From: Laetmonice hystrix | Taxonomy: Eukaryota | NCBI GenBank assembly: GCA_965235115.1 | Contig: OZ249452.1 | Location: 16,306,001-16,370,000, forward strand | DNA: 64,000 bases | Direction: 5' to 3' | Part shown: piece after piece, positions 2,800 to 62,700 of the stretch | Layout: each line of letters opens with the position of its first letter | Numbering within the stretch: the first letter of the stretch is position 1 | Made by a program: the position numbers and the translations under genes | Notes under the pieces: generated by a model | What the model saw: the letters and a program-made list of their open reading frames with translations, nothing else | Databases searched by the model: none | What the model was told of the DNA's origin: nothing

Positions 2800-5700
2800 C
2801 CATAAAGAATGTCTTTCTTAGTGTTGCCTGCGAGCTACGCTTGAATTATGATACTTTTTAGTTTGTCAAAGTCCATGGAAATGTGGCCTATACCAGACAT
2901 TCATAACAAGTGTTCTTTTTGTTTGTGCTCGCAAGTCGTGGAACTGTCAGGGCGGCAACCCCAGTTTGTTGGGTTTCAGGGTGGTTCGACCCTCAGATTT
3001 AGGTTAGTCTACGGCACATAACTTCTGCGTAAAACATAGAAATAGAATCCCCTCGAGTTCGAGCCGCTTGTGTCTGTCGCCAGGAAGATATATGCGTCCT
3101 TTAGAGCATTTAGTGCGCATGCCTAGCGTTAGGTGCGCATGCGTAGGCGGCTCAGAAGCTGCTCTTCCGACATCAATCCATTGCCAGTTAAAGAACTCGT
3201 CCCGCAAGCCTGTTGGTTTCAATTAGCTAGTTAATTGGCCTGTTTGAGGCATCTCCACCCCACGTGTAGGGGCGGAGCCCTGGCGAGGAGCGTCCAGCGA
3301 CGCCGAAAGGTTCTGAAGGCGAGGCTATAGAACGTAATTAGTCCCCGCGAGAGGGCGCAGCGAGCGTGGCTAATGGGGGACTACCTGGTCTAGGGAACGC
3401 TCGCTGCCAACAGATCAACTTCCGGTTTCCGACAAGGACCAATCCGTGCCAAGGATATGAGCCTACCTCTCAGACCATGGCATGAAAATCAATGTTAACT
3501 TAAAACCATTATACCTTTAGGGGATTGTCCACATTGAAGACATGCCCACACGCATATAAAAATACGAATGACAGTTTCTTACAGTGGCCTGACTTGAAAC
3601 AGAATAATACCACCTGTAGAATACAGGATGTTTCCACCTGCACAATAAAGATCTTACTGGAAAACATTGACAAATGTTTTTATCAGGTTAAAATTTTATA
3701 TCAAAATTAGTTCTTCAGACGCTCTTCAAAAATGTTCTACAGTTTTAGGGGTTTTTTTTTAGCAGTTCGTGACTTCTTAAGCAATCGTGTGAAGGGGGGT
3801 TGGTATACCCCCGGAATACGCAGACACCCCCTCCTCAAACCCCAACCCTACCCAGCTGTCTACCAACCCCGCCAGCCCAGGGTCCTCATACGGGTAAATT
3901 AACCCTTAATTACAGACAAATCCAATAAGAGATAGAGCGCCCGTATAGCTTCGTCTAATTGGTGGATGCATTGGAATTTCAGTCCTATTGGCGTGGAACA
4001 GATTTTAATGCTTATACCACTGGCTGACTGGACTGACTTTGACTGACTATAGTTATAACTATGTCTAATGGCAAGGCCTTCCCAGCAACCCTAATGTCTG
4101 GATTTAAAGAGGTTTAATTGACGTACTGGTATTAGTACTTTGACTAATAGTCGCGTTTGGAAAAATTAACGGATATGTCCGATGACTGTACACCGCGCCA
4201 CCAAGCGGATTTGTGTTGTACTTTGGGTCATGGAGGTATATTTGTGAGCTACGGCCGTGCTAAGTGCGCATGCGCAAACATGCCAAAGCAGACGACAATA
4301 ATGAGGGTTGAATCATGATGAAAATGAAAGTGGGTTTGCTTGAAGGTGTGATGTTTTTGTCGAAGCTCCAACTAGTCATTATAAGGTATCAATCAATTCG
4401 TTTTTATCCTACGTCCTCGCTGAGGAACATCGAAAAATAAAAACATTTAGACAACGTTTCCGGTAAGGACGTTAAGACACAAGCCGTACAAGTCGGCTAC
4501 AACTTGTAAACATGTTCATTTCAAGTAACATGTCCGCAGGAGAGTAAATTTGTAAAAAAATCTTTGAAAGACTACAACGGGAAACGGCCAGAGAAGGATA
4601 GGAGGGAGCAGAAAGGAAATCTACCGCCATCTTGACAGCGCCACTCAAAAGACCATCCCTGTTTGCCGTCCGTGCTGACACTCTACCAGTCGATATGTCC
4701 CGTACAGATACTTGTAATTTGGGACCATTAAAATGTAGAATAGCTGGCGGCACAACGGGGGGCCCACACTGACGTTCGGCGCCCGCGCGCTAACCTATAA
4801 TTAACGCTAGGTGGCGCGCACCTCCCATCCGGGCAACTCGCAAACCCGATCGTGTTAAAGGTGTCATGTCACATAGCTTCCTTTCTCGGCGCCATAAATC
4901 ACCAACACGGGGGACACCCTAATCACCACTTACTTGCACCAATATTTTGAAAGACATCAACAAACCCGCAGTAGGTTATGGAGTCCTAGACAAAACGGTC
5001 ACTTTGCAAGGTCACCCAGGTTGGGGTCGTTCACAGAGGGCGCTGTTGATGCGGCGTCCGTCGTGTCGCTGACGGCACACCTGGTGTCTCAGTAACTGAT
5101 CGCCCCCCAACAATCCGCCGACCAGCGTCTCAGCTCACCCAACCGTGACGCGACGGCTGTAGCTATTTGATTTGCTTTGCCCGAGCTTGCTAACACCTGC
5201 TAATTTCCTGTCGTCATTAGTGGGCTCAAACAGTGATCTCTCGCCATTAGTGAGCTCCTTCGTCCTTGGGGTTACGTCAACAGTAGAGCTGTCAAGTATA
5301 AACGAATCGGCCACAGAAAGATGCCTTGCTGACAACCGATAATTTATAGATCGTCGCTTGCATTAAAACCAGCTAAATGTTTGCGCTACGTGTATTTTTA
5401 TAAAAGTGTTTGTACCTAATTGTATTTTACACCGTTATTTGAAACCAGCAAATACATGTATGCGTCACAGACTCATAATTAAAGGCCAAATAGATAACAT
5501 ACACATTGTAAAGTGGGTCTTTCAATCCACCGGGTGGCGACCAAAGCACTGACACGGTGACATATGGGGAAGAAAATTGATGGAAGGTGAAAAAGAAAAT
5601 CAATTTGTCAGAGAATACGTCAGGTACAAGCCATGATGAAAAAATATATAATGCGCACCATAGATAAATAAATATGAAGTAAAATTAACTGAGATAATAA

Positions 5701-6067
5701 GTTGCCGATGATGATAATACTTGACAAATAACAATAATGATGCCAAGAGAAACAAGTTATAACGGTGTGCGATGCCAGATTGAGTAGGTCTCATATTGTT
5801 TCTTCCCATCACATTTAATCGTCGTCACGGCCTGACAATTAAAGGTCCCCTCTTCCATCTCCACAGACCGGTCGAGGCTGCCTTTAGTTTTCACAACTCG
5901 CCGCCGAGTTCAAGCGCCCCCTATTGTCAGCGTTCGGCGGTTCACTGCGCCGTGCCTGCGGTCACTTTGATGTCGTTAATGACGGCTAAGATACACCAGG
6001 TGGCGCTCGTAGATCAGCGTTCTGGTCGTGAGATTGAGGCGTAGTTAGATGATCAAAGTGTGCAGGT

Positions 6068-6505
6068 AGATTCGGTAGATATGTCATAGAGATTCGGTAG
6101 AGATGTCATAGAGATTCGGTAGATATGTCATAGAGATTCGGTAGATATGTCATAGAGATTCGGTAGATATGTCATAGAGATTCGGTAGATATGTCATAGA
6201 GATTCGGTAGAGATGTCATAGAGATTCGGTAGATACGTCATAGAGATTTGGTAGAGATGTCATAGAGATTCGGTAGAGATGTCATAGAGATTCGGTAGAT
6301 ATGTCATAGAGATTCGGTAGATATGTCATAGAGATTCGGTAGAGATGTCATAGAGATTTGGTAGAGATGTCATAGAGATTCGGTAGATATGTCATAGAGA
6401 TTCGGTAGATATGTCATAGAGATTTGGTAGAGATGTCATAGAGATTCGGTAGATATGTCATAGAGATTCGGTAGATATGTCATAGAGATTCGGCAGAGAT
6501 GTCAT
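6068..6505. repeat. 22-bp minisatellite (~20 copies), Wnt1 intron
   Basis: Unit AGATATGTCATAGAGATTCGGT with T/G variants. Confidence 0.95.
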
Positions 6506-6918
6506 ATAGTTACGTGGTGTCAACGCGCCATTGTTTTATCTGAGGCTATGGCAACGTGTTGTGGCTGCCTAGATCATTTCCTATACTGTCTAAATTTAGT
6601 TCTTGCATATACATGTACATGTACTAGGTTTTGTATAGACCCATATATATGTCCGATTGCGGCGGGGGGGGGGGGGGACTGTCCTGTGATATATTTCTTA
6701 ACGCCAGATTATTCAGATTATTTTTGCGATGGAGAGGATTTTTGCGGGGGGAGATTGTGTTATTCGAAGTTCTTAAGTTAAACATGGGCGTGGCTTCTGT
6801 AGAGATTAAAGAATGGCGTTATGTAATATGAAATCTCTCTCTCTCTCTCTCTATCTCGCTCTAATAGGTCTCGCTCTATGACTTACTAAAACAAAGATTG
6901 GTTTACTTGTCCTTGCAG

Positions 6919-7069
6919 CACGTCAGTTCGAGGATGCAGCAGGAATGTAAGTGTCATGGCATGTCCGGAAGTTGCGCAATTAAAACGTGTTGGATGCGCC
7001 TCCAGCACTTCCGGGAGATCGGTTACCAGCTGAAGGATCGCTTCGACGGCGCTTCCCGAGTTTACCAAG
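6919..7069 (+). CDS. Wnt1: Wnt1 coding exon containing the lipidation motif
   Basis: Acceptor ccttgcag|CAC (phase 0), donor CAA G|gtcagt (phase 1). [50 protein letters not shown]; CWMRL and DRFDGASRV are Wnt1-type. Confidence 0.93.
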
Positions 7070-7199
7070 GTCAGTCAAGGTCACTCCATCTCATTCACGA
7101 ACTCTACCTCTTGTGGAACCTTAGATTGTTTACCAAGTCGGATGTCCTAGAGTTTTGTCTTTAACACCTCGTTTAAAGTTAACTTCTTCTTTTTTTCAG

Positions 7200-7543
7200 G
7201 GAATTCGGGAAACGCGATCAGGGACCGGAAAAGTTTGGTGAAGAATAATCTACTTCCGGTTAACCCGAACCATAAAGCGCCAAGCGCGCGAGATCTCGTC
7301 TACTTCGAGAATTCACCCAATTTTTGCGACCCGAGCAATGCGATTGGCTTCAAGGGCACCAGGGGGCGCCCCTGCAATGCGACCTCTATCGGCCTGGATG
7401 GGTGTGACTTGATGTGTTGTGGCCGGGGCCACAGGGCTGAGACATACATGGCCAGAGAACGGTGTAACTGCACTTTTCATTGGTGCTGTGAAGTTACCTG
7501 TCAGATATGCACTCGGCAACGAATGCGGTTTTTGTGTTTGTGA
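7200..7543 (+). CDS. Wnt1: Wnt1 terminal coding exon
   Basis: Acceptor ttttttcag|GG completes the phase-1 codon; [43 protein letters not shown]...CCGRGH...[28 protein letters not shown] (TGA 7541-7543). Confidence 0.93.
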
Positions 7544-8425: not shown

Positions 8426-8483
8426 TGTAACTGGTGAAACGGTAACTGGTGAAACGGTTACTGGTGAAACGGTTACTGGTGAA
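8426..8483. repeat. 15-bp tandem repeat, ~4 copies
   Basis: ACTGGTGAAACGGTT repeats; source of the spurious VTVSP ORF. Confidence 0.9.
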
Positions 8484-11222: not shown

Positions 11223-11684
11223 TCATAGACATCGATGGACCACTTTGTGACGTATGCATGACTGGCACGTGACCTCGCAACACCAATGGAAGCGACACTT
11301 GCAGTTCTCGCGAATCGTCACCGTTTTTCGGCGAGATCCTCTCCCACAACAGAGCAGTTCACAGCCCTCGGTCCTCTGTGACCTGGGGTCACACACACGA
11401 CCTTTTGTCCCTAGAGATCCAACCCTCCGATTGGCCACGCAAAAATTTGGAGACTGCTCTGTGTAGACTATATCCTCCTGTGCTGGCGGTTTTATTTTAA
11501 CGCCCTCAGGAAGCAATGACTTGCCGTCGTTGGAACCAATCACTTTGGAGGCGCTGTCAAATTTGTCTTTGAGATGATTGCCTATTTGACGAAAACTAGG
11601 CATTGTCTGCCAGCAGGTCTTGGTGGCGCAAGACCCAGAAAGCCCGTGACATTTACAGACGGGTTTCATATAGTTAATCACAGC
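11223..11684 (-). CDS. Wnt6: Wnt6 exon 5 (terminal)
   Basis: Acceptor tttcag|GCT; AVINYMKPVCKCHGLSGSCATKTCW...ASKVIGSNDGKSLLP...[22 protein letters not shown]; CHGLSGSC and G.NDGK.LLP are Wnt6-type. Confidence 0.92.
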   Translation of the reverse strand, partial: AVINYMKPVCKCHGLSGSCATKTCWQTMPSFRQIGNHLKDKFDSASKVIGSNDGKSLLPEGVKIKPPAQEDIVYTEQSPNFCVANRRVGSLGTKGRVCDPRSQRTEGCELLCCGRGSRRKTVTIRENCKCRFHWCCEVTCQSCIRHKVVHRCL

Positions 11685-11992
11685 CTGAAACAAGTCCAAG
11701 GTCATCATGAACAAAGGTCACAGTCTGATCAATCATTACCAGATCGTACAACTTTAGGTCAGAGTTGTAAACCATCCGGGAAGGGAGAGAATAAAAGGGT
11801 AGATAAAAGTACGGAGAAAGATCGAAAAAGGCAGAAAATGGCTGAGGACAATGATGCCCTTTTGTACATCTTATGTTACTGAATTTACAGTTGGTTCTAC
11901 CTTGGGCAATAGTTACGCTTAATTATATACACATAAGTAGATATAGAAGTTATACACCCGTGCACCAACACCTATACACAGATACATACATG

Positions 11993-11995
11993 TAC

Positions 11996-12042
<47 letters not shown>

Positions 12043-12056
12043 GGCAGACAGACAGA
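11993..12056. repeat. (ACAG)n microsatellite in Wnt6 intron 4
   Basis: Direct reading. Confidence 0.9.
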
Positions 12057-12069
12057 TATTCTTACATAC

Positions 12070-12231
12070 CAGACGACCTGCCTCACTGTTGTGGAGATGA
12101 ACCAGTGTTTTGATATCATTTCGACGTCCCCGCCGTCGGATATCTATGAACCTTTTCGACTTCACGTAGCCGTAATCTTTAAAAGTGTTTTCACACCCTC
12201 CCCACCTCCACTCCCCCTTGTGGCAGGAGCA
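12070..12231 (-). CDS. Wnt6: Wnt6 exon 4
   Basis: Polypyrimidine tract ttttctatttctttctttctggcgcag|TGC, donor CTG|gtatgt; 162 nt, phase 0/0; CSCHKGEWRWGGCENTFKDYGYVKSKRFIDIRRRGRRNDIKTLVHLHNSEAGRL. Confidence 0.9.
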
Positions 12232-12649
12232 CTGCGCCAGAAAGAAAGAAATAGAAAATCAGCACACTTTCATGTTCACATAATTTTACAAGTATCAGAT
12301 TCGCGAGGGAATAGGCTGCAGGGAGTGGCTCAAAAGTATACCTACAGTACAATAACATTGTGTCGCTACATTTTAACCATTCTGTAGGTATAATGTCTCT
12401 ATCTTATCATCACTATAGAAATTCGGTACAAATGAGCCGGTGAAATAATGAGAAAACACACAATAAAAGGGTCTACTTAGCCGCAATCTCTGAGGGAATA
12501 CTGAGCTGGTCCTAGGGTATCTCTCCGTAGTAGTATTAGTTGCACTTAGTAGAATTAGTAGTAGTAGGAGCGCATGCGTGTGGTACTGCAATTACAGTAA
12601 ATATGGAAAAGATTGTTTCAGTAAGAAATGTGGTAGTAGGCCTAGTAGT

Positions 12650-12675
12650 ATGGCAGCAGCAGCAGAAGTAGTAGC

Positions 12676-12722
<47 letters not shown>

Positions 12723-12765
12723 GAGCAGCAGCAGCAGCAGCAGCAGCAGAAACAGCAGCAGCTAC
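12650..12765. repeat. Compound (GCA)n/(GTA)n trinucleotide microsatellite in Wnt6 intron 3
   Basis: Direct reading. Confidence 0.9.
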
Positions 12766-12913
12766 TTGTAGTAAAATACAATAGAAGATGGCCTACAAAT
12801 AGTTGTATTTGTTGTGGTTAGTTGCAGAACCAGTGTTCGATGGTCCATGCCCTCACTAATGCAGTAGTTGACCAGCGTTTTGTGGGTTAATAAAAGGTCG
12901 GCGGTCAACTTAC

Positions 12914-13005
12914 CTCGAGTAGGCGTCCAAGTGCACATTCGCGAGCAATGGCCACGAGCCCACCGGAAGCAGTAATTGCCCACAGGAAGCCCGTCTCCCG
13001 AGTAT
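12914..13005 (-). CDS. Wnt6: Wnt6 exon 3 (92 nt, not in ORF track)
   Basis: Acceptor ttgtttgttgaacag|AT, donor GAG|gtaagt; (D)TRETGFLWAITASGGLVAIARECALGRLLE; phases match exon 2 (phase 1) and exon 4 (phase 0). Confidence 0.88.
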
Positions 13006-13932
13006 CTGTTCAACAAACAAAGGTCATTACACTTATTATCGCCCATTTGCAAGTAGGTACATCAGACAAAGGGCAATTCCGGTTTGTCCGATTTACAGTG
13101 TGACCTTGGTTAACATTGACTAATTCGAACCAAAATAAACGTGGTAGCCTATAGATCTGGGCTAGTTCAGTTTCGTGCTCAAACATTGGCTGGGCTTAGG
13201 ACATTTCCCAAGCCTATAAAGATATGTCGACGAGGCCGGCACCCACCTACGATGTTGTTTTTTTTTGGGGGGGGGGGGGGCTTAGATTCATAAAGCAAAC
13301 ACAAATGTTTGGCCTGAATTGTGCGAAAAATTAAATGGCTGATGAACGCAAGTGTATGAAATACAGAATGCTGAAATTAGCTTAGCCAATGAATCATCCC
13401 CTCTTAATTGCTTACAAATAGAAATCTCTGACACATCTCTGCAAACTCATGCCAGAAACGTAGATCTAGTCAGACTTTTTACTGTGTCGTCCAATGTTAA
13501 TTGACATGTTTTCTTTGCTGTTAAAACACTGCAAGTTTATGAGACCAAAAAAATGCAAGAAGCCGCCCCCATTTCAACCACTGACGACGAAACAACAGTG
13601 CTACTTTCCCCGGCCGCCGGGACTTAGGTCACTGCCGGAAACGTCCAACCAGGCCCATCTAAATGTACTTACGGTGTACGTAGTGCCTGGAGCTCTCATC
13701 ACTTCACGTGTGGACACAAAAATCACCACCTAACAACTCACCCTGCCTCCAGTTCTGACTGAAATCACCCTATACAACTGAAATCGTCAGGAACTACAGA
13801 GAACCTTGTTTGAACCCTTACACAGATGGTACAGAGACGCCCGGATGTAGATCTACACATACCCATCCGATTAAAAACTCAATCCAACTATTATACCTTG
13901 AAATTCATGCCGCCTCAGCCCAACCGAACTCC

Positions 13933-14114
13933 ATGCCCTGTGAGTAAGGGCAAGGGTCTGTAGACCCCTACATAAGTCATACAAGACACAGAGAGGTGAA
14001 ATATCTGGACTTGACCGTTTGTTATGCCCTGTGATTAAGGGCAAGGGTCTGTAGACCCCTACATAAGTCATACAAGACACAGAGAGGTGAAATATCTGGA
14101 CTTGACCGTTTGTT
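13933..14114. repeat. 91-bp tandem duplication
   Basis: ATGCCCTGTGA(G/T)TAAGGGCAAGGGTCTG...GACCGTTTGTT at 13933 and 14024, near-identical. Confidence 0.9.
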
Positions 14115-16098
14115 CCAAATACATCAGGGACCAAATGTGTGCAGTTCAAAGAAATGGTTCAGAATCGAGAATTTTTGATAAAACAACTTTCTTTCAGTTT
14201 GACCATGATTAGGATTTTCCTGAGACGTACTGTAAAAGGGCTACTATCTTTCTCTCTGCCATGGCCCCTCCCCAATCATTCACCCCCTCCCACCCCCACC
14301 CCCACACATGCACCCTACACACTCTTCCAGACCCTTCTCTACGTTCACTCAGAACGACGAAGATGTTTTGGCGCTAAACCACGCCATCTGTCAACGTCCT
14401 GTCCAAGTTGCCAAAAGTCGTTGCCATAAATGACTTTTATGAGACGTCCGCTAAGTGCTCACTTGGAGCGCCCTCTATCGGCTCCATTTGACTCATTTCA
14501 CACTCTCTCACGTATACGTTGTCGAGTTGACCTCCCCTGACAAATGCCGGCTGGATACCTAGCCCGCTTACCTCCCCACACAGATTCCAGGTGAAGTCGA
14601 TGGGTAAGCCAAGTAAGAGTCTGTGTTCACTCTTTACTAATTGAAGTTATTATTCCGCGGTCACGAGGGTGAGAAAGTTCAGCGAAAACTATAGATCACG
14701 GAATTCTTCAGCCGGTAGAACTGGAAACGCAGCAAAAATTGTTTACTTTTCCTCAGAAGTATTGCATACAAAGGGACTGACACATTCTATCTATGTCAGT
14801 CGAACTCCAAACGCGCACGTCATACCAGGATGTGGCACATCCATGTTAAAACAGAAAGCTATACGTCTGGTCAAATGTGTTTTAATGTTTTTTTTAGTTT
14901 TGTAGACTTTCTATTATAGAGCCTGTGGAAGGCCTTTTGAATTGAACCTTCTCTTAGGCCTCTATAGATCTCTATCTATCCTTTTGTAACCGGGACGGGA
15001 CAGATGGCACTTGTCTATTTTTAAACACTGACGGACCTTTAAGAAAAATGACGGCATTTTCTTTTGGAAAGTGGTATGGTAAGTTCATCCATCTCATGAG
15101 AATGGAAATCATGCGCCGACGATTGTTAATAGTGTACCTCGATTTATACACTCCTGTCTCTTTCCATCGTAATTGTGTCATTAGCAAAAATTACGTCGTC
15201 TGATTACGCTGGCAACGGGACAACTCGTGACGTTCTTCTCGCGTCTCGCTGTTTATCGTCTGCCGCGTGAGTTTGTTGGTGATTGACAGATTGGCTATAG
15301 GACGCCCAAGTTTAGTAAAAATAATTGAACCGCCTATAACAACAACATTTGCCACCTCTACATTCCTGATAGTCGATCGTGGTTGTTGTCACTCAGCATA
15401 TTTACAAAGTTTGCGATATCCTAGCACATATCCAACGGATATCACGCAACTAGTGTTTGGCCGCAATCCCATCAAGTGGAAGATGGTGACAGATTTACGT
15501 GCGCCCGCGTCTAAATAAAGAACAGATTTACAGAGCAACATTTACACTAAACTTACTGACTCTTGATCTGGAATACACGACAAGACAAAATTGTGGAGAA
15601 CGGCAAAGGCGAAGGTTTGTATATCCTTTAGAGGACGTGCGCTATTAGACCCTACCAGCAAAACGGAGACAGTGGCAACATTTTTTCAGACTCTATAAAT
15701 GTTGTGTTCTGTTATATCGGTCATAATAACTCAGATTCTATACTTGTGTTATCATAATTAGATCTATGGAAGGAGATGTCTATATATGCTGATAGGATGA
15801 GCGTTGTCAGCACTGATCAACTGATAACAGATTTGCCAGGATGTTCATTAGGGGAGGGCATGTATCCTGGACTCATGTTGCCGTTAGATATCTACACCAA
15901 ACGAAGGAAGTTCCTACTGCACTCAACTTTAAGAACTTAGGAAGAACGTGCTTAGACTATTATAGCGTGGAATTACGCAGAGTACTGTAGCTTGGGCTGT
16001 GAGGGTGAATATGCATCCTGCACCCCCACCCCCACCCCCACCCCCACCCCCACCCCCACCCCACGGGCCTGGATTGCTCACGGAAGGATCAAACTTAC

Positions 16099-16319
16099 CA
16101 TATTTTAGAATGCGTACAAATGATCTGTGCCGAGTTGTACAGTTCCATTGCCTGTCCCGGAACTGGTATTGACATTCCGCCAGAGCTAATCGAACTCCGT
16201 TCGCGATCGCTTCGACAACATCTCGTTCTTTGTCGCAAATCTCGCGTTGCCTTCCTCCAATCTTACGAGATTTCCTACAGATGGCGTTGGCGTCTGTAAT
16301 GAGTGGACTTCCTACGGCC
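16099..16319 (-). CDS. Wnt6: Wnt6 exon 2 (221 nt, not in ORF track)
   Basis: Acceptor cattaaaag|G, donor TAT G|gtaagt; (W)AVGSPLITDANAICRKSRKIGGRQREICDKERDVVEAIANGVRLALAECQYQFRDRQWNCTTRHRSFVRILKY; WWAVGSPL...ICRK is the Wnt6 N-terminal signature. Confidence 0.93.
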
Positions 16320-28668: not shown

Positions 28669-28740
28669 ACAATATCAATTGTGGTCTTCGGTAATGTACA
28701 ATGATCCGAAATGTCTGCGGTAATTATAATATGATCCATA

Positions 28741-30500: not shown

Positions 30501-31010
30501 TACCTATACCTATACCCACATACATAAATACTTACACTTACCCATAGATACTACATGGTGCGCACACATACATAATGCCATATATAATATATGTTTACCA
30601 GCATACATAAACATATGTTATATACCTAGATGAGCGTATTGTTTACGTGACATACATTTTCGTAGATTTATCGTGAGACCCTGGAGCAAACCGTCCAACC
30701 ATTGCCCAGACCTGATAGTATACCCAGGTTATAAACCCGGACTGCCACCAGGGGGCCTTCTCAGATGTAGTCGGATGCTCAGCGACTTGCTTGGCCAGCA
30801 GGGGTCGCTTGGTACAGGGTTCTAATTGACCTGCTCGACGACAGGGGGCGCTTTGGAGTAAGGTGGTCGAAAACGACGCGGTTCGACGTGGCTTCCCACC
30901 CCGGGGGTTTATATCACATTTCGAAACAAGTTACGGGGGAGAGAATGATCGAGCTGAGCGGTATCTGTGAGACTATGACCAACGTGTAAAATAATGACAT
31001 TAACTTGGGT

Positions 31011-52500: not shown

Positions 52501-52515
52501 AACTTTGTTGTGCAG

Positions 52516-52778
52516 AACGACGGGCAATGACATTCTGGGTCTGGACATACCGGAAGAGCCGAACTTAGACCCTAACACCGTGTGCAAAACGTACCCGGAT
52601 CTTACGCCTGCGCAGTATGACTTGTGCCGGCGGTTTCCGGATGTGACGGCGTCTGCTATCCAGGGTATCCAGATCGCCGTTCACGAGTGCCAACACCAGT
52701 TTACACAACATCGATGGAACTGTTCAGCCCTCGAGAAGAAAAATAAAAATCCTCACTCCAGCCCGCTTCTTTCGCAAG
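52516..52778 (+). CDS. Wnt10: Wnt10 exon 2
   Basis: Acceptor ttgttgtgcag|A, donor CAA G|gtaagg; [62 protein letters not shown]...; NDIL, NTVC and [20 protein letters not shown] are Wnt10-type. Confidence 0.93.
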
Positions 52779-53307
52779 GTAAGGGTAAGCATTGGCCTAC
52801 TTTTATTTATTAATAAATTTTTACAAACCAGTTTTATGTAGGACCCATAGAATTGGGCCGACTTACAGAGAAAGAAGGCAGAGAGATTTGTTTGCACCAT
52901 CCGTTTTGGAGCTTTAAAATGACACAAAACCTGAAAGGTACTAGTATTATAATTGTTCAGTGATAGAGAACTTGTTCTCTTTTGATTACTTTTTGATTTT
53001 GTCATCACCTCAAGTTACGTAGGTCATAGCCAAGAGGATAACCAGAGTAGGTTATTGATATAGGGCCGTGCGCGGGGTTACTGTATCCCCCTTCCATCCA
53101 GAATGAATCAAGTAAAATATAGCCTTGGATTGCAGTTCCATTAGGCCTAAAGTAAATTTCAAAATTTCCCGGCATGCCCCTGGACAGCCCTAGCACCCCC
53201 CCCCCCCCCCCCCCCAGTTTATAACCCAACCCCCCTCAGAGGTTCCTGTAATAGGAGAAAGGAGAAAAATGGACTGAACCCCAAGGAGAACATGGGTGGC
53301 CTCGATA

Positions 53308-53736
53308 GGTTGGTGGGGTCGGAGTGAGAGGGTTGGAGGTTGGAGAAGTTGGTGGGGTCGGAGTGAGAGGGTTGGAGGTTGGAGAAGTTGGTGGGGTCGG
53401 AGTGAGAGGGTTGGAGGTTGGAGAAGTTGGTGGGGTCGGAGTGAGAGGGTTGGAGGTTGGAGAAGTTGGTGGGGTCGGAGTGAGAGGGTTGGAGGTTGGA
53501 GAAGTTGGTGGGGTCGGAGTGAGAGGGTTGGAGGTTGGAGAAGTTGGTGGGGTCGGAGTGAGAGGGTTGGAGGTTGGAGAAGTTGGTGGGGTCGGAGTGA
53601 GAGGGTTGGAGGTTGGAGAAGTTGGTGGGGTCGGAGTGAGAGGGTTGGAGGTTGGAGAAGTTGGTGGGGTCGGAGTGAGAGGGTTGGAGGTTGGAGAAGT
53701 TGGTGGGGTCGGAGTGAGAGGGTTGGAGGTTGGAGA
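53308..53736. repeat. 39-bp G-rich minisatellite, ~11 copies, Wnt10 intron 2
   Basis: GGTTGGTGGGGTCGGAGTGAGAGGGTTGGAGGTTGGAGAAG-type unit; essentially identical copies. Confidence 0.96.
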
Positions 53737-54699
53737 AAATTGCGCAGTTCTCCGTCTAGTATATATCTGAACAATCATTAGACCATCTTGTCGTCGGTTG
53801 CCAAGTGACATTCTCACGAAATAGAGGTTCGGGACAGGGATAGGGATTAGAGACAGGGGTAGGGATTAGGGACACAGACAGGGATTAGGGACATGGATAA
53901 GTTTTTAGAGGGGTCTGAGTACTCGGGTTTGGGGGCTGCATGGTCAGTTTTAGTCTAGGCAGGACGTTTAGATTTTTAGTGTTTAACTCCCTCAATTTCA
54001 TGGAAAAGTTACCATGGGGAAGGACATGGATCTGATGAGAGCAGGTTCCTATAGCTTGCCTCATTAGAGGCGGCGGCACGCCCTGCACCCACCCAGTCAG
54101 CGTCAACTCGTCACTCACCGCTAATTGTGCTCGGAGACCGCCGCCCCGTGCACCTCTCGGTTCCCGACCGGCCCGCCAGCCGTTCCGCCCGACTCCTGTC
54201 TGACGGACACCCCGGCTGACGTCCCGGCGGGATCCGGGGCAGTGTGGCCCGGTGGCCTCCACTCACCGCCCGGGCCAGGGTGGGACCTGACAGCCGGCTG
54301 GTGGTGAAACGGTCTGGTATAGCAATCTGCGATAGTTTGTCTTTTCCCGCGTGTGTTGATCTTGGACCTTATAATTATGGGGGCCCAGTCGGGACCTGAT
54401 GCTCGCAATGAGAACCCCAGGTGTTGGGCATCATTTAGGGCTCGTTTTGATACCCCCGACCACCCCACCCCTCCCAGCGCCCCGGTCTACCGCGGAGTGA
54501 GGCTCTCACCGCCCCCAATAACACACCCGCAAACATACCTGATATAAGGTCAGGGACGAAGGACTCGTATGGTATTATACAATATCCGAGAAGATGGGAT
54601 CTATAACTACAAAAATGTATTTTGTTTTTGTCCCAAACTATTTGATTATGGAATCTTTGAGGGAAAAGAAGAGAGAAGAAAGCAGAGTCCGACATTAAA

Positions 54700-55082
54700 A
54701 GCTATGAATGAGAGTCACCGTGCACTCGAGATGAGTCGACATTCCCAGCTAAACATTAAAGGCCATGCTATGAATGAGAGTCACCGTGCACTAGAGACGA
54801 GTCCACATTCCCAGCTAAACATTAAAGGCCATGCTATGAATGAGAGTCACCGTGCACTAGAGACGAGTCCACATTCCCAGCTAAACATTAAAGGCCATGC
54901 TATGAATGAGAGTCACCGTGCACTAGAGACGAGTCCACATTCCCAGCTAAACATTAAAGGCCATGCTACGAATGAGAGTTACCGTGCACTCGAGACAAGT
55001 TCACATTCCCAGCTAAACATTAAAGGCCATGCTATGAATGAGAGTCACCGTGCACTCGAGACGAGTCCACATTCCCAGCTAA
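54700..55082. repeat. 66-bp tandem repeat, ~5.7 copies
   Basis: GCTATGAATGAGAGTCACCGTGCACTAGAGACGAGTCCACATTCCCAGCTAAACATTAAAGGCCAT. Confidence 0.93.
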
Positions 55083-55112
55083 GTCAGCTTGAATTACAAA
55101 GTAAATTCGACC

Positions 55113-55442
55113 TGTTATATTGCAACATATGCCAAATAGAGGTCGTGATATTGCAACAGGTACCAAATAGAGGTCGTTATATTGCAACAGGTACCAAATA
55201 CAGGTCGTTATATTGCAACAGGTACCAAATACAGGTCGTTATATTGCAACAGATGCCAAAAAGAAGGCCGTTATATTGCAACAGGTACCAAATAGAGGTC
55301 GTTATATTGCAACAGATGCCAAATAGAGGTCGTTATATTGCAACAGGTGCCAAATAGAGGTCGTTATCTTGCAACAGGTACCAAATAGAGGTCGTTATAT
55401 TGCAACAGGTGCCAAATAGAGGTCGTTATATTGCAACAGGTG
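55113..55442. repeat. 31-bp tandem repeat, ~10 copies
   Basis: AAATAGAGGTCGTTATATTGCAACAGGTACC, period 31. Confidence 0.93.
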
Positions 55443-56065
55443 CACAACAGAAGTGTTAGTCATATCAAGACACTTCACACATTGCCGGGATTCTTGAGTT
55501 TTGACAGGCGTTTGTCGGACGACGACAAACACTTGGTGAAATCAAGTCGTAAACACAAGTCGCAAACATCAGTCACAAACACCGTTTTTTGACAGGTTGT
55601 TTAATCTACGTGATCACATTTTACATGAGTATTATGTGTGTATGAGGCACCTACCATACAGGAACGGTTTAAAAGTTTGTGTTTTTTTTTAATCTGGAAT
55701 TCTTTCAAATGGTTTGACTTTGCCGCTGTCCCTTTCTCCAGCACACAAGACGAAGTATCAAAAATTTTGTAGGCCATTTCATTGATCATTTTAGTAATGT
55801 TTAACATTCTTAGCAGCATTTACTTAAGTGTCGATCTTGTAACGCCTGTATGTATATAGTGTGTCTATTGCAGATTGCCTTGTCTGATGTAATTACCATT
55901 TATGGCATGAATAGAGGTCTAATGATGGCGTCTTATACCTCACGATATTATATAATTCTTTTTGTCCAACGAAAGTCTTGTCATCACCCCATTCATCAAC
56001 TGATCAATTATTATGTTTAATTTTATTTTATTTATTAATTGATTAAAGTGTCCCTTATATTGCAG

Positions 56066-56328
56066 GGTTCAAGGAGACGGCCTTTGCGTACGCTGTCTCT
56101 AGTGCGGGAGTTAGTACCCAGGTGGCGCGAGCGTGCAGTCTGGGTAAGTTGGCAGCGTGTGGCTGTCAACCACACCTTGACACCAGCAGCAATTCGTGGA
56201 AGTGGAAAGGATGCAATCACAACATTCAGTTCAGTGATGAATTCGCCAGAAAGTTTCTCGATTCCAAAGAAAGCGCAAAAGATCTACAATCACAAATAAA
56301 TTTACACAACAACAGAGTTGGAAGACTG
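56066..56328 (+). CDS. Wnt10: Wnt10 exon 3
   Basis: Acceptor tatattgcag|GG, donor CTG|gtgagt; (G)FKETAFAYAVSSAGVSTQVARACSLGKLAACGCQPHLDTSSNSWKWKGCNHNIQFSDEFARKFLDSKESAKDLQSQINLHNNRVGRL (87 full codons). Confidence 0.93.
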
Positions 56329-57509
56329 GTGAGTTGAGTCGTGGATAAGGTTTGCATTAATTATGTATATTTTTAAATATCATGGCAGAGCGGGCATTCT
56401 TCATCGATTTACGCATCAAAAGTCTTCAAGGATTATATTTATTAAATTCCTTTCAAATGTCCCTTTTGATGTCTATTATATAGCTGACCATGATAGCATG
56501 GTTCAAATTAAATTTTTATTTCAAAACAAATTGTAGCAAATGAGTCTTGAGTCTTCCCACCAGCAGACGTACCCGTTAAATCAAACGACGTCAGACCCGA
56601 TGTAGTTTGTTCCTTATATACGAGAAGATTGTCTCGTAAAAGCAGTTCGCCCGGTGTGGCCTACCACCATGAGGTAGTACGCCGGGGAATTGTTCCCGGC
56701 AGCCGAGGACTCGAGTAGTGTTGAGTTCGTCTCGGAGATAGAGAACTCCCGTCGTGGATATCGACATTCCGGATCTCTCGGCGTCAAAACAAAACCACAT
56801 GACGTGTTCTGTTTGTACCGCCTCAACCGACCCAACCCCCCGGCACATTCAACCACACATGAAATCGATTATTCGCCTTCAGTTCGGATATTAATTACAG
56901 CATGTAAGAGCGGGTCTGACTTTGATCAGAGACCGAGACCGACCGAGCAGCCAGGACCGGGCGGGGTGAGGCTGGGAGTCGGCCGGGCAGACCCGGAGAA
57001 AACGAGGAACGAGTCGTGGTGAAATTGAAGGTGACGTGGTAGTCTGTGGTGGCCGTCCGAGTTTAAGAGGATAATATCACTACTTACCAACACCCGGTGT
57101 AGGGTTTCTAGTGGGGTGGGGGTGGGGGTGGGGTGAGGGTGTGAGGGTGAGAAGGATCTGACGTCAGGGTGGGGTGGCTGCCCGGCCCGCAGGCCCGACT
57201 CTCACGGTCCGCCTCAGGAGCGTATATCGAGTGAGCTATGGGTCCGAGTGGTGGTCGTGCTGGATTGGTGGTTTATTATGCCTTAATAATTGTACTCATT
57301 ATGGCGGTATAATTGCACGTTTAACTCCGCAGCGGATGCTAAATGAATTAATGTAGGGAGGACGTGATTTGAAACACCTCCATGGACACATCGCCATGGT
57401 TGATGGGCCACGCATCTTTATTTACAGATTATAGAAGATGATAAAATATATTTTATAACTTAATGAGAACAAAATAACCTAGAAGATCTTTCTCAAACTA
57501 AGTGTTGTC

Positions 57510-57700
57510 GTTACCTGTATTGGTGTATAATGAAGTGCAGTTTTGGAGAGGTACTATAGTCTACCTTGGCCCGGTACGATAAGAGGGATATTGTAAGACT
57601 AAAGACCTCTACTCTTGAAGGCCCAGCCCGAATAACGACAAAATTGCCCCCTGTATGAATCAGCCTTACCAATAATATAATCTGTAACCTGGAGTTCAAA
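57510..57700 (+). mobile_element. Possible decayed 3' end of a CR1/L2-like LINE ORF2
   Basis: Frame-broken reading W-P-RYDKRDIVRLK...LEGPARITTKL resembles the WSP.YKKDI..LE.VQRRATKL segment of LINE ORF2; by eye only. Confidence 0.3.
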
Positions 57701-58585
57701 TAATCACCAATTATGGAGAAAAATAAACAAACAAAAAACGCGCAGACACCAGTGGCATCTCAAGAGTTTCACCTCGGCCAAATCTTATACATTTTGTCAA
57801 CAACGCCATTCAACGGTTCGCGCTGTTTCGAAATTTAAACTCTGTGGGCTGTCCTACTATTTCATTGTCCTCATAGGCTACAGGCGAGTGTATGATCACT
57901 ATATTTATACGTCATATATAGCTTGGGGTGAAAGGTATGTTATCTCATCGCTATATATTCGGGCTGCCCCTTTAAATTTGATTCTGAACCAGTTTTAAGT
58001 TTGAGAGAACTTTCTGATGAAGACCCAGGGAAGATTCCATTTAACTTGTTTAACTTTTCCTGACTAGATTCATCAATAGGAACAGATTCTCTCTCTAAAT
58101 TTCTAATTTCAAAATTTAAGGCTCTGTAGCCTCCCAGCCTTGCCTCAACCTAATTGCTAATGGGTCCACACACAAAAACTAGGCAGAGCGTCGCAAAGAC
58201 ATACTTGAGGTTCACAATGCAAGGGAACTGGAAGCACAAGCACGCCATCTGGTGATAGAGAAACATATTACTGACGGATACGAATAGTGCCCTCTGTTGA
58301 AAACCCGGAAAATCGATGCTGCCACCTGTCGGCTCCCCTAGATACTTCGCTGCCAAAGTAGTCTCGATCACCAGCCCTTTTGACCGCTAGAGGCCGCTCA
58401 TCGCTCGAAAAGCTTGCGGATAGGAGGACTGGTGGTCCAGTCTACAATGACAATGGTGCAGGATTTTGAACATTTAGATTTCTACGATTGGTGGAACCAT
58501 TCCACTTGAACCATCAAGTCCATACCAATGACCTGTAACGTATACGAGAGTTACAATAATTTGTTCTCGACTCTTGTATATGCAG

Positions 58586-58732
58586 GTTGTACGCAAGAAC
58601 GTACGACCGCTGTGTAAGTGCCATGGCATGTCGGGAAGTTGTGAACTGAAAACCTGCTGGAAGGCGGCGCCACCGTTCCGACAAGTCGGAGATGTCCTCA
58701 AGAGGAAGTTTAGGCACGCTACAAAGGTACAG
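58586..58732 (+). CDS. Wnt10: Wnt10 exon 4 containing the lipidation motif
   Basis: Acceptor gtatatgcag|GTT; [49 protein letters not shown]; donor CAG|gtactt (alternative in-frame donor 6 nt upstream). Confidence 0.9.
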
Positions 58733-59426
58733 GTACTTAAATCACGGTGTTTTACTGATTTCTCATCTGAACAAGGGGGCAAGAGGGGCCTTACCCTACG
58801 GTAACATTCTCACGATAGAGTCTATAAGTGATAGGGGCTCGCGTTAAGGATCGGATAGGACCCCTATNNNNNNNNNNNNNNNNNNNNNNNNNNNNNNNNN
58901 NNNNNNNNNNNNNNNNNNNNNNNNNNNNNNNNNNNNNNNNNNNNNNNNNNNNNNNNNNNNNNNNNNNNNNNNNNNNNNNNNNNNNNNNNNNNNNNNNNNN
59001 NGAGAGGGGAAGGTCTGGGGACTGGGAGTAGAGGTTAGGATAATGTCTGTGTCAAGGAATATTAATCGTCCTAAATTTGTAGTTCTTAACGCTATATTTT
59101 CTGGAAATGTTACCATAGGGTGAAGGCGATATAGCTAGGGGCGGAGAAGATACTGAATCTGATTCCTGAAGGTCAGCTAGCCGGGAATTAAAGTGAAAAC
59201 TATAACTTTTCCAAAATTTCCAGCAGGTCCTTGAGATAAAAAAGTAAATGTTAACGGTCCGAGTTAAACGCCTCTCTTGGAACTTGACCCTTTCAAAACT
59301 CGAACCTTTATCACTTTGGTAATCTTCTTCTTACCGATTACAGAATGATAGCGGAGAGAAACCTGAGCTGCTGTACTATAAAAAATTGAGATGACAATAG
59401 TTCCTCCCTGCTGGTTTTGTTTCCAG

Positions 59427-59750
59427 GTCGACAATACGAACGCAGCCAAGGGAAGACTCAAGCCAGTGCGCAAGCGCAGACGGCGCCCGCATCCCATGGA
59501 CTTGGTTTATTTTGAAAAATCGCCGAATTTCTGCGAACCGGACCCGACGGTCGACTCTCATGGGACGCAGGGCAGGATTTGTAACAAAACGAGCCTCGAT
59601 ATCGATAACTGTGAGACGTTATGTTGTGGCCGTGGTTACAACACGCTCAAAGTGACGCGTACGGAACGCTGTCACTGCCGGTTCCATTGGTGTTGTTACG
59701 TCATCTGTAAGAAATGTACCTTCAGTGATTGGGTGACGGTCTGTAAGTGA
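59427..59750 (+). CDS. Wnt10: Wnt10 exon 5 (terminal)
   Basis: Acceptor ttttgtttccag|GTC; [37 protein letters not shown]...CCGRGYN...[28 protein letters not shown]; FHWCCYV.C and W..VCK* are Wnt10-type. Confidence 0.93.
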
Positions 59751-62700
59751 GCCGCGCATGCGCACTGTGCCGCACGAGGAGGGGACGCTGTGACGCTGAG
59801 TCTTTCATAACTGTGCCGCTAGATGGCGCTTCCGTTTACCGTATATAGCATTGCAGGCTGTTGTTGCAATTTATACGTCGGCAATATTTTGTAAATACAG
59901 GATGTATACGCAACGTCATTTCAAGATCAATTTTAACACCTATGCACATTGGCTCACTGCGTTTTGTTTGGTTGTCAATTGACACTGGGGACACCACGAA
60001 ATGACCTGTTAGTATCACCCACTGAACTGATTAATGAGCTAGGCGGCCTCGAGTGCCTTTCATTGGGATTAAATCTATTGGCGACAAACACAGTGCCAGT
60101 GATTGCGGAATAAATGCTTCTGCGATATAGAATTTGAAATAAAGGGCGATTTTGTAAAATACATGGATTTCACCGTGGAAACTCCTGGTGACGTTTAAAA
60201 AATGTAAATATGTATATTTATAAAGATAGTCGTTAGACCCACTGCAATAAATCGATGGGTTTTTGTTATCGGGCTGGGAGGGACCCCACTCCCAGTTCCA
60301 ACACTCAACTCCCAGATATAACATAACTTTGGCCTATTAAAATCACTATAACTCCACTGCCAACCCGTATCCAGGCCCTATTATACCCACCTCAAAGCAC
60401 CATCCTAGCCTTCATAAGACGTTGTAAGTCACAATACCGCAATAAAGGGTCAATAGTTTCTCAGTCGCCTTCAATCGATGCCCCAATAATACATGGGCCC
60501 TTAGATGGGTGGTCAGCTGTAGCTGGTTGTGTAAGAGGTTCTGACACTTTGAAATAACGTGGATTGTTCATGAGATGAGGGCAGATTTCACAAATTCCCC
60601 CCTTCAACCCCCTGGCTCAGTACAAAAAATACCCCCCCCCCCCCCCAATTAAAACATCATGGTATATAACCTTAGATTTATGTACATTGGCAGGGTTACT
60701 GGACTCATTTGTATAGATTATTACTAGCCCTTGGTTGTTTCCTATAAGTAGTAAGGCAATGACCCCCCCCCCCCCCACCCCGGGCCTACGGGTGATGGGG
60801 TGGGACCTTGGATGTTAGTATTTAAGATTACCTTGTAAATAAAACGCTTTATAAAAAATATATATATAGCATGGAAGGTACCATCTTGATGGCGTTTCCA
60901 ATGACTTGGCTATCAAACCGACCCAGGACAAGTTTTGTCTGTCAAGTAACACTCTTTGGTTAGACTAATATGTTATAGTGACCGGGTCTGAATTCCTAAT
61001 CTTCTAATACGCAATCAATCCTGCAAGTGTTGGCCATTATCCCACAGTATTTAATGTTATCTAGAGGATAAATGGCACATTCCCCAAACTGATTTCCTCT
61101 AACAAATGTCTGTATTTCTCTTCAATGTCCTAATTATTTGATTAATTCAGGACTCATTTGTTATTCTGCGACCCAGCCACCTTAAAGGGGATCTCTAATA
61201 TCCGTGCAGGCTAGGTACATATTCCGGTGTGTAATCGATCACGTGATCAACTTTGACCTCTGACTAAGCCCTGCACACTGAACTCCGGTATGGTGTAACA
61301 AGGCAGAATGTGGAATATCCACTCAATATCCTGAGACTCTTGTCAAAGTAATTCTGAGGTAGCACTAAACATTATAAATATCCTCCTAGCATAGATGTGT
61401 AATCCTGATTGCACAATGAAGGACCTTCTCAAGGGAATCTCCTCTCGCGCGAGAAGAGATATAACGAGAGGCTACGAGATTTCTCACAGAATGATTTAGA
61501 GTTTTAAAGTAGGTTCTCACTCTTTCCAACTCATTGGTAGGCCTGGGTTAGAAGTACTTGGCTTGCTGCAACTCATACCGTTCACCTATCTTCTATCTCA
61601 AGTCAGAAACGTACACTGACAGTGGCCAGCTGTTCTGAAACTGAGTATAATATTCTGACCCTTCTACGCTTATGTTTGGCGAATGTTCTAATGGAAGAAC
61701 CAGCATTGCAGGGGCCATAAAACAGGCCCACAAGCACAGGTCTTTATCAGGCAACCCGGGACCTTCAAATAATTGACTGGACCATGTAAGCAGACGTACG
61801 ACCAACCTCAATAATCTGATCGTGGTCCTGATGTCCTATTCGAGTTATTCGTTTCAACATTTTTCCTGACTGTAACGGCACTCCCATGTTTGACCAATCA
61901 ATTTTGGTGCCAGGTTTCGGCTCTTAACGCACGGATCGATAAAAGGGGACAGACATAATATATATGGCACCACTGTTGGGAAATTGGAGAAGAAAATATT
62001 CTGACTTAGTGTGCATGGTCTCCATTTTAACCGGCACAAAATTACTTTTTTCGTAATCAAAGCAATCCTGTAACATTGTCAAACTCGCCATATGTCACAG
62101 TATCTGGACTTTATTTTTACCCACAGTTCATCAGGTCGCACCAGATTCACCAGGAAGGAATTGTCGGGAGACAACTGGTTTCAAGTCTGGAAGTCGGGCA
62201 GTGTATTATTGTGAATAAAGCCACCATGCCGTGACATTGACTCGGATGTTGACTTTGAACTGTTTACATCCAATAGAAACGACTGTAGCAAGTCTTAGAG
62301 AATTTGACGCCAAACGAACGGGCGGCACCAGGTACGAGGTACCAGGCACAAGGCACCAGGCACAAGGCACTAGGCACCAGACACCAGGCACGTCATTGAT
62401 CTGTCTCCGCATGCGCGTGTTTTTACCTCCACCACGTGATCAAGACGCATGATTCATGGGATACTGTTAGGAGAAACTGATAGCTGAGTGTTACATGTGG
62501 CCCAGACAGTTGGCTATCTTAGACCTATTATAGATAGTGATTTATATACCGTCTCATCCTCACATTAAGAACTGCTTTCCGAGACTTCAGACCATGGGAT
62601 CGACCTCTAACCTTAGCGATAGGACGATACGAGACAGCCTATATCGTATCTCATTGTGAATTATTAGATCTTTGTCCAGGATCTCACATCTTGGTGCCGC

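What the first reader, a model, noticed from the sequence alone, without database searches (positions are those of the whole stretch)
3345..59829. Orientation-blocked CTCF-like motif architecture partitioning the Wnt cluster into putative loop domains
Seen in sequence: ~28 14-mers close to the CTCF core CCRSYAGRKGGCRS, with orientation switching in blocks. Forward at 3345, 4804, 5030, 5527, 5993, 7356, 9274 (one reverse at 5914). Reverse at 14468, 26408, 26443. Forward at 26708, 27369, 27392, 29335, 30745, 30795, 30838. Reverse at 33272, 45745, 45977, 47638, 58242, 58287, 58319 (one exonic forward at 56115). Forward at 58384, 59816. Two are perfect consensus matches (CCGCCAGAGGGCGG, CCGCTAGATGGCGC). 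Established: CTCF is a bilaterian protein, and in vertebrates convergent sites anchor cohesin loops while divergent pairs mark boundaries; that rule is not considered general in invertebrates. Inference: the pattern predicts a Wnt1+Wnt6 domain (~3-26 kb) and a Wnt10 domain (~27-58 kb). If real, this is vertebrate-like insulator grammar in an invertebrate Wnt cluster. Caveat: motifs were picked by eye, so selection bias is possible.
Basis: partly seen in the sequence, partly recalled or inferred. Interest (0 to 1): 0.82.

Follow-up and report, generated by a model that had tools for sequence, protein, structure and literature searches.

The report
CTCF-type motif clusters, no orientation grammar
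The Wnt1-Wnt6-Wnt10 region of this lophotrochozoan genome really is studded with clustered CTCF-type binding motifs, and the genome encodes CTCF, but the claimed orientation blocks and vertebrate-like loop domains do not survive an unbiased scan.

Summary
All 28 listed 14-mers sit at the stated coordinates. The motif enrichment is real. An unbiased scan of CCRSYAGRKGGCRS finds 19 sites with at most 1 mismatch, against 1.2 expected in dinucleotide shuffles. Genome-wide the perfect consensus occurs 17,733 times against 312 for a reversed control.

The genome encodes an 11-zinc-finger CTCF that is colinear with human CTCF and has a YDF motif. Sites form tight clusters: 7 adjacent pairs within 100 bp against 0.8 expected. 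All checked non-coding sites except 58384 lie in single-copy DNA. Density is about 2.2 times the genome mean.

The orientation blocks are not supported. The runs test gives p=0.35 for the unbiased list. Collapsing tight same-strand clusters gives p=0.2-0.9. Four listed sites score as background.

The proposed domain anchors lie inside Wnt1 intron 2 and Wnt10 intron 3. The forward member of the 58.3 kb "boundary" sits in a dispersed repeat. Recent literature finds no orientation signature in protostomes.

Most likely these are orientation-independent CTCF-bound elements. The scan's first readers noted CTCF-like arrays on another piece of this genome too.

The parts
3345..6006 (.). Group of six CTCF-type sites in Wnt1 intron 2: 3345+, 4195-, 4804+, 5527+ (weak, 11 bits), 5914-, 5993+. 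Orientation is mixed.
   Evidence: The whole stretch 3300-6050 is single-copy in the genome.
7356..7392 (.). Two motif matches (7356+, 7379-) inside the last coding exon of Wnt1, encoding [13 protein letters not shown]. They are constrained by coding, so their status as binding sites is ambiguous.
14468..14481 (-). Single strong site (17 bits, 1 mismatch) in a Wnt6 intron.
   Evidence: single-copy
26408..27405 (.). Cluster of four sites in GC-rich intergenic DNA upstream of the mapped Wnt6 exons: 26408- (perfect, 20.2 bits), 26708+, 27369+, 27392+.
   Evidence: single-copy
30745..30851 (+). Three tandem forward sites within 107 bp (30745, 30795, 30838).
   Evidence: single-copy
33272..33288 (-). 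Quasi-palindromic site: 33272- at 16.3 bits, with an overlapping weak 33275+ at 10.8 bits.
   Evidence: single-copy
45745..47651 (-). Three reverse sites (45745, 45977, 47638) in intergenic DNA upstream of Wnt10.
   Evidence: The sites are single-copy; the dispersed repeat at 46391-46669 does not touch them.
58242..58397 (.). Four sites in 156 bp of Wnt10 intron 3: 58242-, 58287- (11.7 bits), 58319-, 58384+. The last one lies in a dispersed ~87-bp repeat and has C at the near-invariant core G.
59816..59829 (+). Perfect consensus site (20.4 bits), 69 bp after the Wnt10 stop codon.
   Evidence: single-copy
2169..7540 (+). Wnt1-like gene, 3' part. Exons at about 2169-2457, 6916-7083 and 7199-7540. 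Exon 1 lies 6.7 kb upstream of the window.
11226..16264 (-). Wnt6 gene. Exons at 11226-11717, about 12019-12222, about 12908-13009 and 16106-16264. The first exon was not located.
52595..59747 (+). Wnt10-like gene. Exons at about 52595-52771, 56062-56334, 58583-58747 and 59421-59747.

Best explanation
The window holds about 20 genuine instances of the bilaterian CTCF core motif. Most are in single-copy intronic and intergenic DNA of a Wnt1-Wnt6-Wnt10 cluster in a lophotrochozoan, and many sit in tight clusters of 2-4 sites within 160 bp or less.

Shown: the motif is non-random, it is clustered, and the genome encodes a CTCF with conserved DNA-reading fingers.

Inferred: these fingers (ZF3-7) read the motif, and each cluster forms a high-occupancy platform. 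Such platforms would act as orientation-independent insulators or as promoter and enhancer tethering elements between differently regulated Wnt genes, as described for flies and echinoderms.

The apparent orientation blocks come from hand selection plus counting tight tandem clusters as independent sites. They are not a loop-domain grammar.
For: Local enrichment: 19 sites with at most 1 mismatch against 1.24 in shuffles, and 23 PWM sites of at least 13 bits against 1.5.

Genome-wide enrichment: 17,733 perfect matches against 312 for the reversed control, and 86,887 against 11,035 at up to 1 mismatch. Among the one-mismatch sites I listed, the mismatches fall mostly at the motif edges, positions 1, 4, 5 and 14.

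CTCF gene: a CTCF gene lies at C7, about 17.405-17.412 Mb, with zinc-finger motifs spread over six exon-like open frames. Two of these exons are colinear with human CTCF residues 307-372 (155 bits in a single stretch) and 372-418. An SVYDF motif is present in the N-terminal part.

Single-copy context: every non-coding site of at least 13 bits was checked, and all but 58384 are single-copy. The two exon sites 7356 and 7379 were not checked.

Clustering: 7 adjacent pairs within 100 bp against 0.78 expected, p about 5e-5.

Density: 2.2 times the genome mean (Poisson p=0.0017) and higher than the flanks (binomial p=0.011).

Orientation is consistent with random.

Literature: there is no orientation signature and no looping at convergent pairs in protostomes, echinoderms or cephalochordates.
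Against: There are no occupancy, accessibility or contact data for this organism. Only three DNA runs were found, and no RNA, ChIP or ATAC runs.

Conservation could not be tested. The nearest relative's contig gave no DNA. A distant relative's Wnt6 locus (63% amino-acid identity, 35% GC) has no sites in 20 kb.

At the 13-bit threshold there are two runs of six same-strand sites (26.7-30.8 kb forward, 33.3-58.3 kb reverse). This is nominally unusual (post hoc p=0.018; sum of squares p=0.04), so a weak orientation effect in the right half of the window is not excluded.
Confidence: 0.6

Rival explanations
1. One reading: vertebrate-like grammar. Convergent forward and reverse CTCF blocks would anchor cohesin loops that split the cluster into a Wnt1+Wnt6 domain (3-26 kb) and a Wnt10 domain (27-58 kb), with divergent boundaries at 26.5 and 58.3 kb.
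For: At 13 bits or more there are six forward sites at 26.7-30.8 kb followed by six reverse sites at 33.3-58.3 kb (post hoc p=0.018). The CTCF ortholog keeps the YDF cohesin-contact motif.
Against: - The unbiased scan gives p=0.35.
- Four listed sites are background.
- The 3-16 kb part alternates in orientation.
- The anchors lie inside Wnt1 intron 2, leaving the Wnt1 promoter outside the domain, and inside Wnt10 intron 3.
- 58384+ is repeat-borne and has a defective core.
- Neither 100 sites on C1 nor the 264-kb region shows orientation autocorrelation.
- The strand of contigs 24645-45025 is unverified.
- The YxF motif is kept across bilaterians that lack looping, and KTYQR, which is gnathostome-specific, was not seen.
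- Protostomes show a baseline orientation metric (3DR) and baseline loop scores.
Confidence: 0.05
2. The motif is an over-represented word for reasons other than CTCF function, for example another zinc-finger protein, relics of repeats, or a mutational bias. On this view most instances in the window are not bound or not functional.
For: The genome has very many C2H2 zinc-finger genes (2,323 first-look candidates, with a dense array on C8). Some genome-wide matches sit in satellites and dispersed repeats. One window site (58384) is repeat-borne. Two matches are in a coding exon. A distant relative's Wnt6 locus has none.
Against: The word equals the conserved bilaterian CTCF core, and the CTCF exons covering ZF3-6 align end-to-end with human CTCF. 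Only 3 of the first 100 perfect sites on C1 are in a tandem repeat. All checked non-coding window sites but one are single-copy. Among the sites I listed, mismatches fall mostly at the weakly informative motif edges.
Confidence: 0.2
3. The orientation blocks are partly an assembly artefact. One or more contigs between N gaps might be placed in the wrong orientation, which would flip all their motifs together.
For: The forward block (26708-30838) lies entirely in contigs 24645-30043 and 30292-45025, which carry no gene to anchor their strand. Gaps 17115, 24471 and 45026 have unrelated sequence on either side.
Against: The blocks are not statistically significant, so no artefact is needed to explain them. 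Contigs 2609-17114, 45273-58867 and 59002-64000 are anchored by colinear Wnt exons, and the 30044 gap has the same-strand (CTAC)n repeat on both sides.
Confidence: 0.05

Closest known systems
Orientation-independent CTCF sites of non-vertebrate bilaterians (Drosophila insulators; CTCF motifs at echinoderm TAD-like boundaries)
   Same: Same core motif and a conserved 11-zinc-finger CTCF. Sites are found in introns and between developmental genes, and there is no detectable orientation rule (for the literature; here).
   Different: This is a lophotrochozoan Wnt cluster. No binding or contact data exist, and partner proteins such as the insect Cp190 are unknown here.
Vertebrate convergent-CTCF/cohesin loop anchors and clustered divergent TAD boundaries
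   Same: Same motif, tight multi-site clusters, and a YDF motif in the CTCF N-terminus.
   Different: Orientation is statistically random here. The proposed anchors cut through genes, and the proposed domains are only about 25-30 kb. The KTYQR motif was not found, and the literature places loop anchoring at or after the origin of Olfactores/vertebrates.
CTCF sites in bilaterian Hox clusters (Heger et al. 2012, cited; content recalled from my own knowledge)
   Same: CTCF-type motifs are concentrated in a conserved developmental gene cluster of an invertebrate.
   Different: This is a Wnt cluster rather than a Hox cluster, and the enrichment over the genome mean is only about 2-fold.
Transposon-borne CTCF motif expansions (e.g. 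mouse SINE B2; my own knowledge)
   Same: One site (58384+) lies in an ~87-bp dispersed repeat with at least 347 candidate copies.
   Different: All the other checked sites in the window are single-copy, so the array is not transposon-derived.

Membership tests
CTCF binding sites (bilaterian core motif) | Matches to the core consensus at a fixed threshold exceed composition-matched expectation | tested here: met
   19 sites against 1.24 expected (at most 1 mismatch) and 23 against 1.5 (PWM at least 13 bits)
CTCF binding sites (bilaterian core motif) | The genome encodes CTCF with the DNA-reading zinc fingers conserved | tested here: met
   C7, about 17.405-17.412 Mb. Zinc-finger exons are colinear with human CTCF 307-372 and 372-418
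CTCF binding sites (bilaterian core motif) | The motif is over-represented genome-wide | tested here: met
   17,733 against 312 for the reversed control; 86,887 against 11,035 at up to 1 mismatch
CTCF binding sites (bilaterian core motif) | Occupancy by CTCF in vivo | not testable with these tools
   No ChIP, ATAC or RNA runs were found for this organism
CTCF binding sites (bilaterian core motif) | Sites conserved in related species | tested here: inconclusive
   The nearest relative's contig gave no DNA. A distant relative's Wnt6 locus has 0 sites in 20 kb.
Vertebrate-type oriented CTCF/cohesin loop domains | Non-random orientation, with forward sites on the left and reverse sites on the right of each domain | tested here: not met
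Runs-test p values are 0.35, 0.52 and 0.10 by threshold.
Vertebrate-type oriented CTCF/cohesin loop domains | Orientation signature beyond the locus | tested here: not met
   100 perfect sites on C1 give p=0.25 and the 264-kb region gives p=0.33. This is a small sample. Published 3DR values for protostomes are about 1.
Vertebrate-type oriented CTCF/cohesin loop domains | CTCF N-terminal cohesin-halting motifs (YxF, KTYQR) | tested here: inconclusive
   SVYDF is present. KTYQR was not seen in open frames of 45 aa or more. YxF alone is also kept in species that do not form such loops.
Vertebrate-type oriented CTCF/cohesin loop domains | Contact-map loops and insulation at the anchors | not testable with these tools
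   No Hi-C or Micro-C data are accessible
Clustered-CTCF insulator elements (orientation-independent) | Several sites packed within about 100-200 bp, more often than chance | tested here: met
   7 adjacent pairs within 100 bp against 0.78 expected, p about 5e-5
Clustered-CTCF insulator elements (orientation-independent) | Enhancer-blocking or boundary activity | not testable with these tools
   Needs reporter or deletion assays
Transposon-borne CTCF motif array | Sites lie in copies of a dispersed repeat | tested here: not met
   Only 58384 does. All the other checked sites are single-copy.

The most novel reading that the evidence does not exclude
The right half of the window could be a real oriented unit. 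Six forward sites at 26.7-30.8 kb face six reverse sites at 33.3-58.3 kb (five of them at 45.7-58.3 kb). With a CTCF that keeps the YDF motif, these could retain cohesin and enclose the Wnt6-Wnt10 intergenic regulatory DNA and the Wnt10 promoter in a loop of about 20-30 kb. That would be orientation-dependent CTCF looping in a spiralian.
Probability: 0.05. Interest if true: 0.75.

Novelty: new member of a known kind. Interest (0 to 1): 0.3.

Why it matters
Whether CTCF orientation grammar existed before vertebrates is an open question, and spiralians are poorly sampled. This locus gives a concrete set of about 20 single-copy candidate CTCF sites and five tight clusters in a conserved Wnt cluster, which CUT&Tag and Micro-C could test directly. 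As it stands the sequence does not argue for vertebrate-like grammar. It fits the current view that the motif and the protein are ancestral while the orientation rule is derived.

Tried and rejected
- JASPAR MA0139 was not available.
- De novo 8-mer enrichment on the TRF-masked 264 kb was swamped by residual repeats and gave nothing usable.
The genome-level orientation test therefore rests on the 100 positions printed and on the 264-kb region.
- Genome-wide counts of tandem motif pairs are dominated by minisatellites, so they cannot be compared with inverted pairs.
- Both sequencing-run searches returned three DNA runs of one sample and no RNA, ChIP, ATAC or Hi-C runs.
- Relatives: the closest Wnt6 relative (76% identity) gave no DNA. 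The next one (63%) has no sites in 20 kb, but it is too distant and too different in composition to be informative.
- Rfam and an inverted-repeat search on the 58.3 kb repeat found nothing.
- Wnt6 exon 1 and the transcription start sites could not be located. Whether the 26.4-27.4 kb cluster is a promoter therefore stays open.
- The assignment of Wnt1 and Wnt10 rests on cluster order and C-terminal sequence, which is my own knowledge. Only Wnt6 was checked against named relatives.


Full report
**What is in the window.** The window is C29:16,306,001-16,370,000 of a 627-Mb assembly in 35 contigs. It holds three Wnt genes.
- A Wnt1-like gene lies on the + strand, with exons at about 2169-2457, 6916-7083 and 7199-7540. 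Its first exon is 6.7 kb upstream of the window.
- Wnt6 lies on the - strand, with exons at 11226-11717, about 12019-12222, about 12908-13009 and 16106-16264.
- A Wnt10-like gene lies on the + strand, with exons at about 52595-52771, 56062-56334, 58583-58747 and 59421-59747.
- A fourth Wnt gene lies 24.5-29 kb upstream of the window.
- The nearest named relatives of the Wnt6 exon are molluscan Wnt-6 proteins at about 60% identity, so the organism is a lophotrochozoan.
- Wnt6 and Wnt10 are separated by about 36 kb that is full of minisatellites.

**The observation.** All 28 listed 14-mers are at the stated places and strands.

In 300 shuffles that preserve dinucleotides within 2-kb blocks, the expected counts are 0.023, 1.24 and 18.9. 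The excess is therefore real and lies entirely in the 0-1 mismatch class.

A PWM trained only on the 200 kb flanking the window finds 23 sites of at least 13 bits against 1.5 expected, and 31 of at least 10 bits against 6.9. Seven sites were missed, including 4195(-), 7379(-) and 36667(+). Sites 7356 and 7379 lie in the Wnt1 coding exon.

**Is the motif meaningful in this genome?** Yes.
- Genome-wide the perfect consensus occurs 17,733 times, against 312 for the same pattern read backwards. With up to one mismatch the counts are 86,887 against 11,035.
- Only 3 of the first 100 perfect sites on contig C1 are copies of a tandem repeat.
It matched CTCF residues 351-409. I then searched the genome with it.
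- One locus, at C7 about 17.405-17.412 Mb, carries exons with zinc-finger motifs. Two of them align colinearly with human CTCF 307-372 (155 bits in one stretch) and 372-418.
- An upstream exon encodes SVYDF, the YxF cohesin-contact motif. KTYQR was not seen.
- A recent preprint reports that YxF is kept across bilaterians, whereas KTYQR is gnathostome-specific.

**Local architecture.** The window has 2.2 times the genome-mean density of sites with at most 1 mismatch (19 against 8.7, Poisson p=0.0017). It is also denser than its flanks (binomial p=0.011). The raised density actually runs from about -47 kb to +66 kb, covering the whole four-gene Wnt cluster.

Sites are tightly clustered. There are seven adjacent pairs within 100 bp against 0.78 expected, p about 5e-5. 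Close pairs are 5 tandem, 3 divergent and 1 convergent.

Genome searches with the DNA around every non-coding site of at least 13 bits show single-copy sequence. The one exception is 58384(+). It lies in an ~87-bp dispersed repeat with at least 347 candidate copies, and it carries C at a core position that is G or T in all other sites.

**Orientation.** The block pattern fails unbiased tests.

| Site list | n | Runs-test p |
|---|---|---|
| At most 1 mismatch, unbiased | 19 | 0.35 |
| PWM at least 10 bits | 31 | 0.52 |
| PWM at least 11 bits | 27 | 0.35 |
| PWM at least 13 bits | 23 | 0.10 |

After merging same-strand neighbours within 100-1000 bp, p is 0.2-0.9.

At 13 bits or more there are two runs of six. 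This is nominally unusual post hoc (p=0.018; sum of squares p=0.04), but it disappears once tight clusters are merged (p=0.25-0.39). The apparent blocks therefore come largely from counting tandem clusters (27369/27392, 30745/30795/30838, 45745/45977, 58242/58319) as independent observations.

The left 16 kb alternates: + - + + - + + - + - +. The 100 perfect sites listed for C1 (p=0.25) and the 264-kb region (p=0.33) show no orientation autocorrelation. Runs of five or six also occur there.

**Fit to the genes and the assembly.**
- The left 'anchors' of the proposed Wnt1+Wnt6 domain lie in Wnt1 intron 2, which leaves the Wnt1 promoter outside the domain. The right 'anchors' of the Wnt10 domain lie in Wnt10 intron 3.
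- Reverse-then-forward switches like those at 26.5 and 58.3 kb also occur at 4195/4804 and 5914/5993, and in the flank at -44007/-43968, -30122/-30066 and -20375/-19923.
- No motif touches a gap.
- Three gaps are consistent with continuity: 2464 (intronic), 30044 (same-strand repeat on both sides) and 58868 (colinear exons).
- The other three, at 17115, 24471 and 45026, cannot be checked. The strand of the contigs that hold the whole forward block is therefore unverified.

**Literature.**
- Two October 2026 preprints and an echinoderm study report that the motif and the protein are conserved across bilaterians.
- The same studies find that protostomes, echinoderms and cephalochordates lack an orientation signature and lack loops at convergent pairs.
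- For spiralians, a 2023 review reports only motif enrichment at TAD borders in a squid.

**Conclusion.** The motif array is real and is most likely a set of CTCF-bound elements acting without an orientation rule. Binding and function are inferred, not shown. The orientation-blocked loop-domain reading is not supported, though a weak effect in the 26-59 kb part cannot be excluded without contact maps.

The scan's first readers also noted CTCF-like arrays on another piece of this genome, and the 58.2 kb cluster separately. I tested only the latter.

Noticed in passing
window 58359-58445: An ~87-bp dispersed repeat with at least 347 candidate copies genome-wide at 77-93% identity. It has no Rfam match and no inverted repeat. 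It carries the CTCF-like site 58384+. Whether the repeat family as a whole carries the motif could not be checked.
   Followed up: partly
window 46391-46669: A ~280-bp dispersed repeat with at least 530 candidate copies at 72-79% identity. Some copies sit as inverted neighbours. It does not overlap any motif site.
   Followed up: no
window 1-1313, 18343-20544, 37620-39368, 40207-44978, 53309-53737 and others: The window has an unusually high minisatellite load. Examples are a 40-bp unit x33, a 44/88-bp unit x50, a 32-bp unit x54, a 57-bp unit x80 (4.8 kb) and a 39-bp unit x11 at 100% identity. These arrays explain the excess of matches with 3 mismatches or fewer.
   Followed up: partly
genome-wide (G000): Closely spaced inverted pairs of the 10-bp motif core, with a gap of 10-40 bp, are far above control. 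Plus-then-minus pairs number 1023 (control 11) and minus-then-plus pairs 496 (control 10). This is a 2:1 asymmetry. It is partly due to repeat families and to the different geometry of the two arrangements.
   Followed up: partly
L005:9466-9741 and L006:1297-5952 (G000 C7, about 17.405-17.412 Mb): The CTCF ortholog locus. Zinc-finger motifs are spread over six exon-like open frames, the N-terminal exon encodes SVYDF, and the C-terminal tail is acidic.
   Followed up: partly
G000 C8, about 24.4-29.4 Mb: A very large array of C2H2 poly-zinc-finger genes. Most of the roughly 200 listed hits to a two-finger query fall in this 5-Mb stretch.
   Followed up: no
L015 (G000 C29:16277165-16281509, 24.5-29 kb upstream of the window): A fourth Wnt gene on the - strand next to Wnt1. 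It is probably Wnt9, going by the conserved cluster order, but this was not tested. CTCF-type sites continue across it.
   Followed up: no
L008 (window coordinates -99866 to -95469): A tandem repeat of about 845 bp in which each copy carries the same one-mismatch motif (CCGGAAGGGGGCAG). This is an example of how repeats inflate genome-wide motif counts.
   Followed up: no
window 7356-7392: Two convergent motif matches 23 bp apart inside the Wnt1 coding exon ([13 protein letters not shown]). The paralogous exons of Wnt6 and Wnt10 have none.
   Followed up: no
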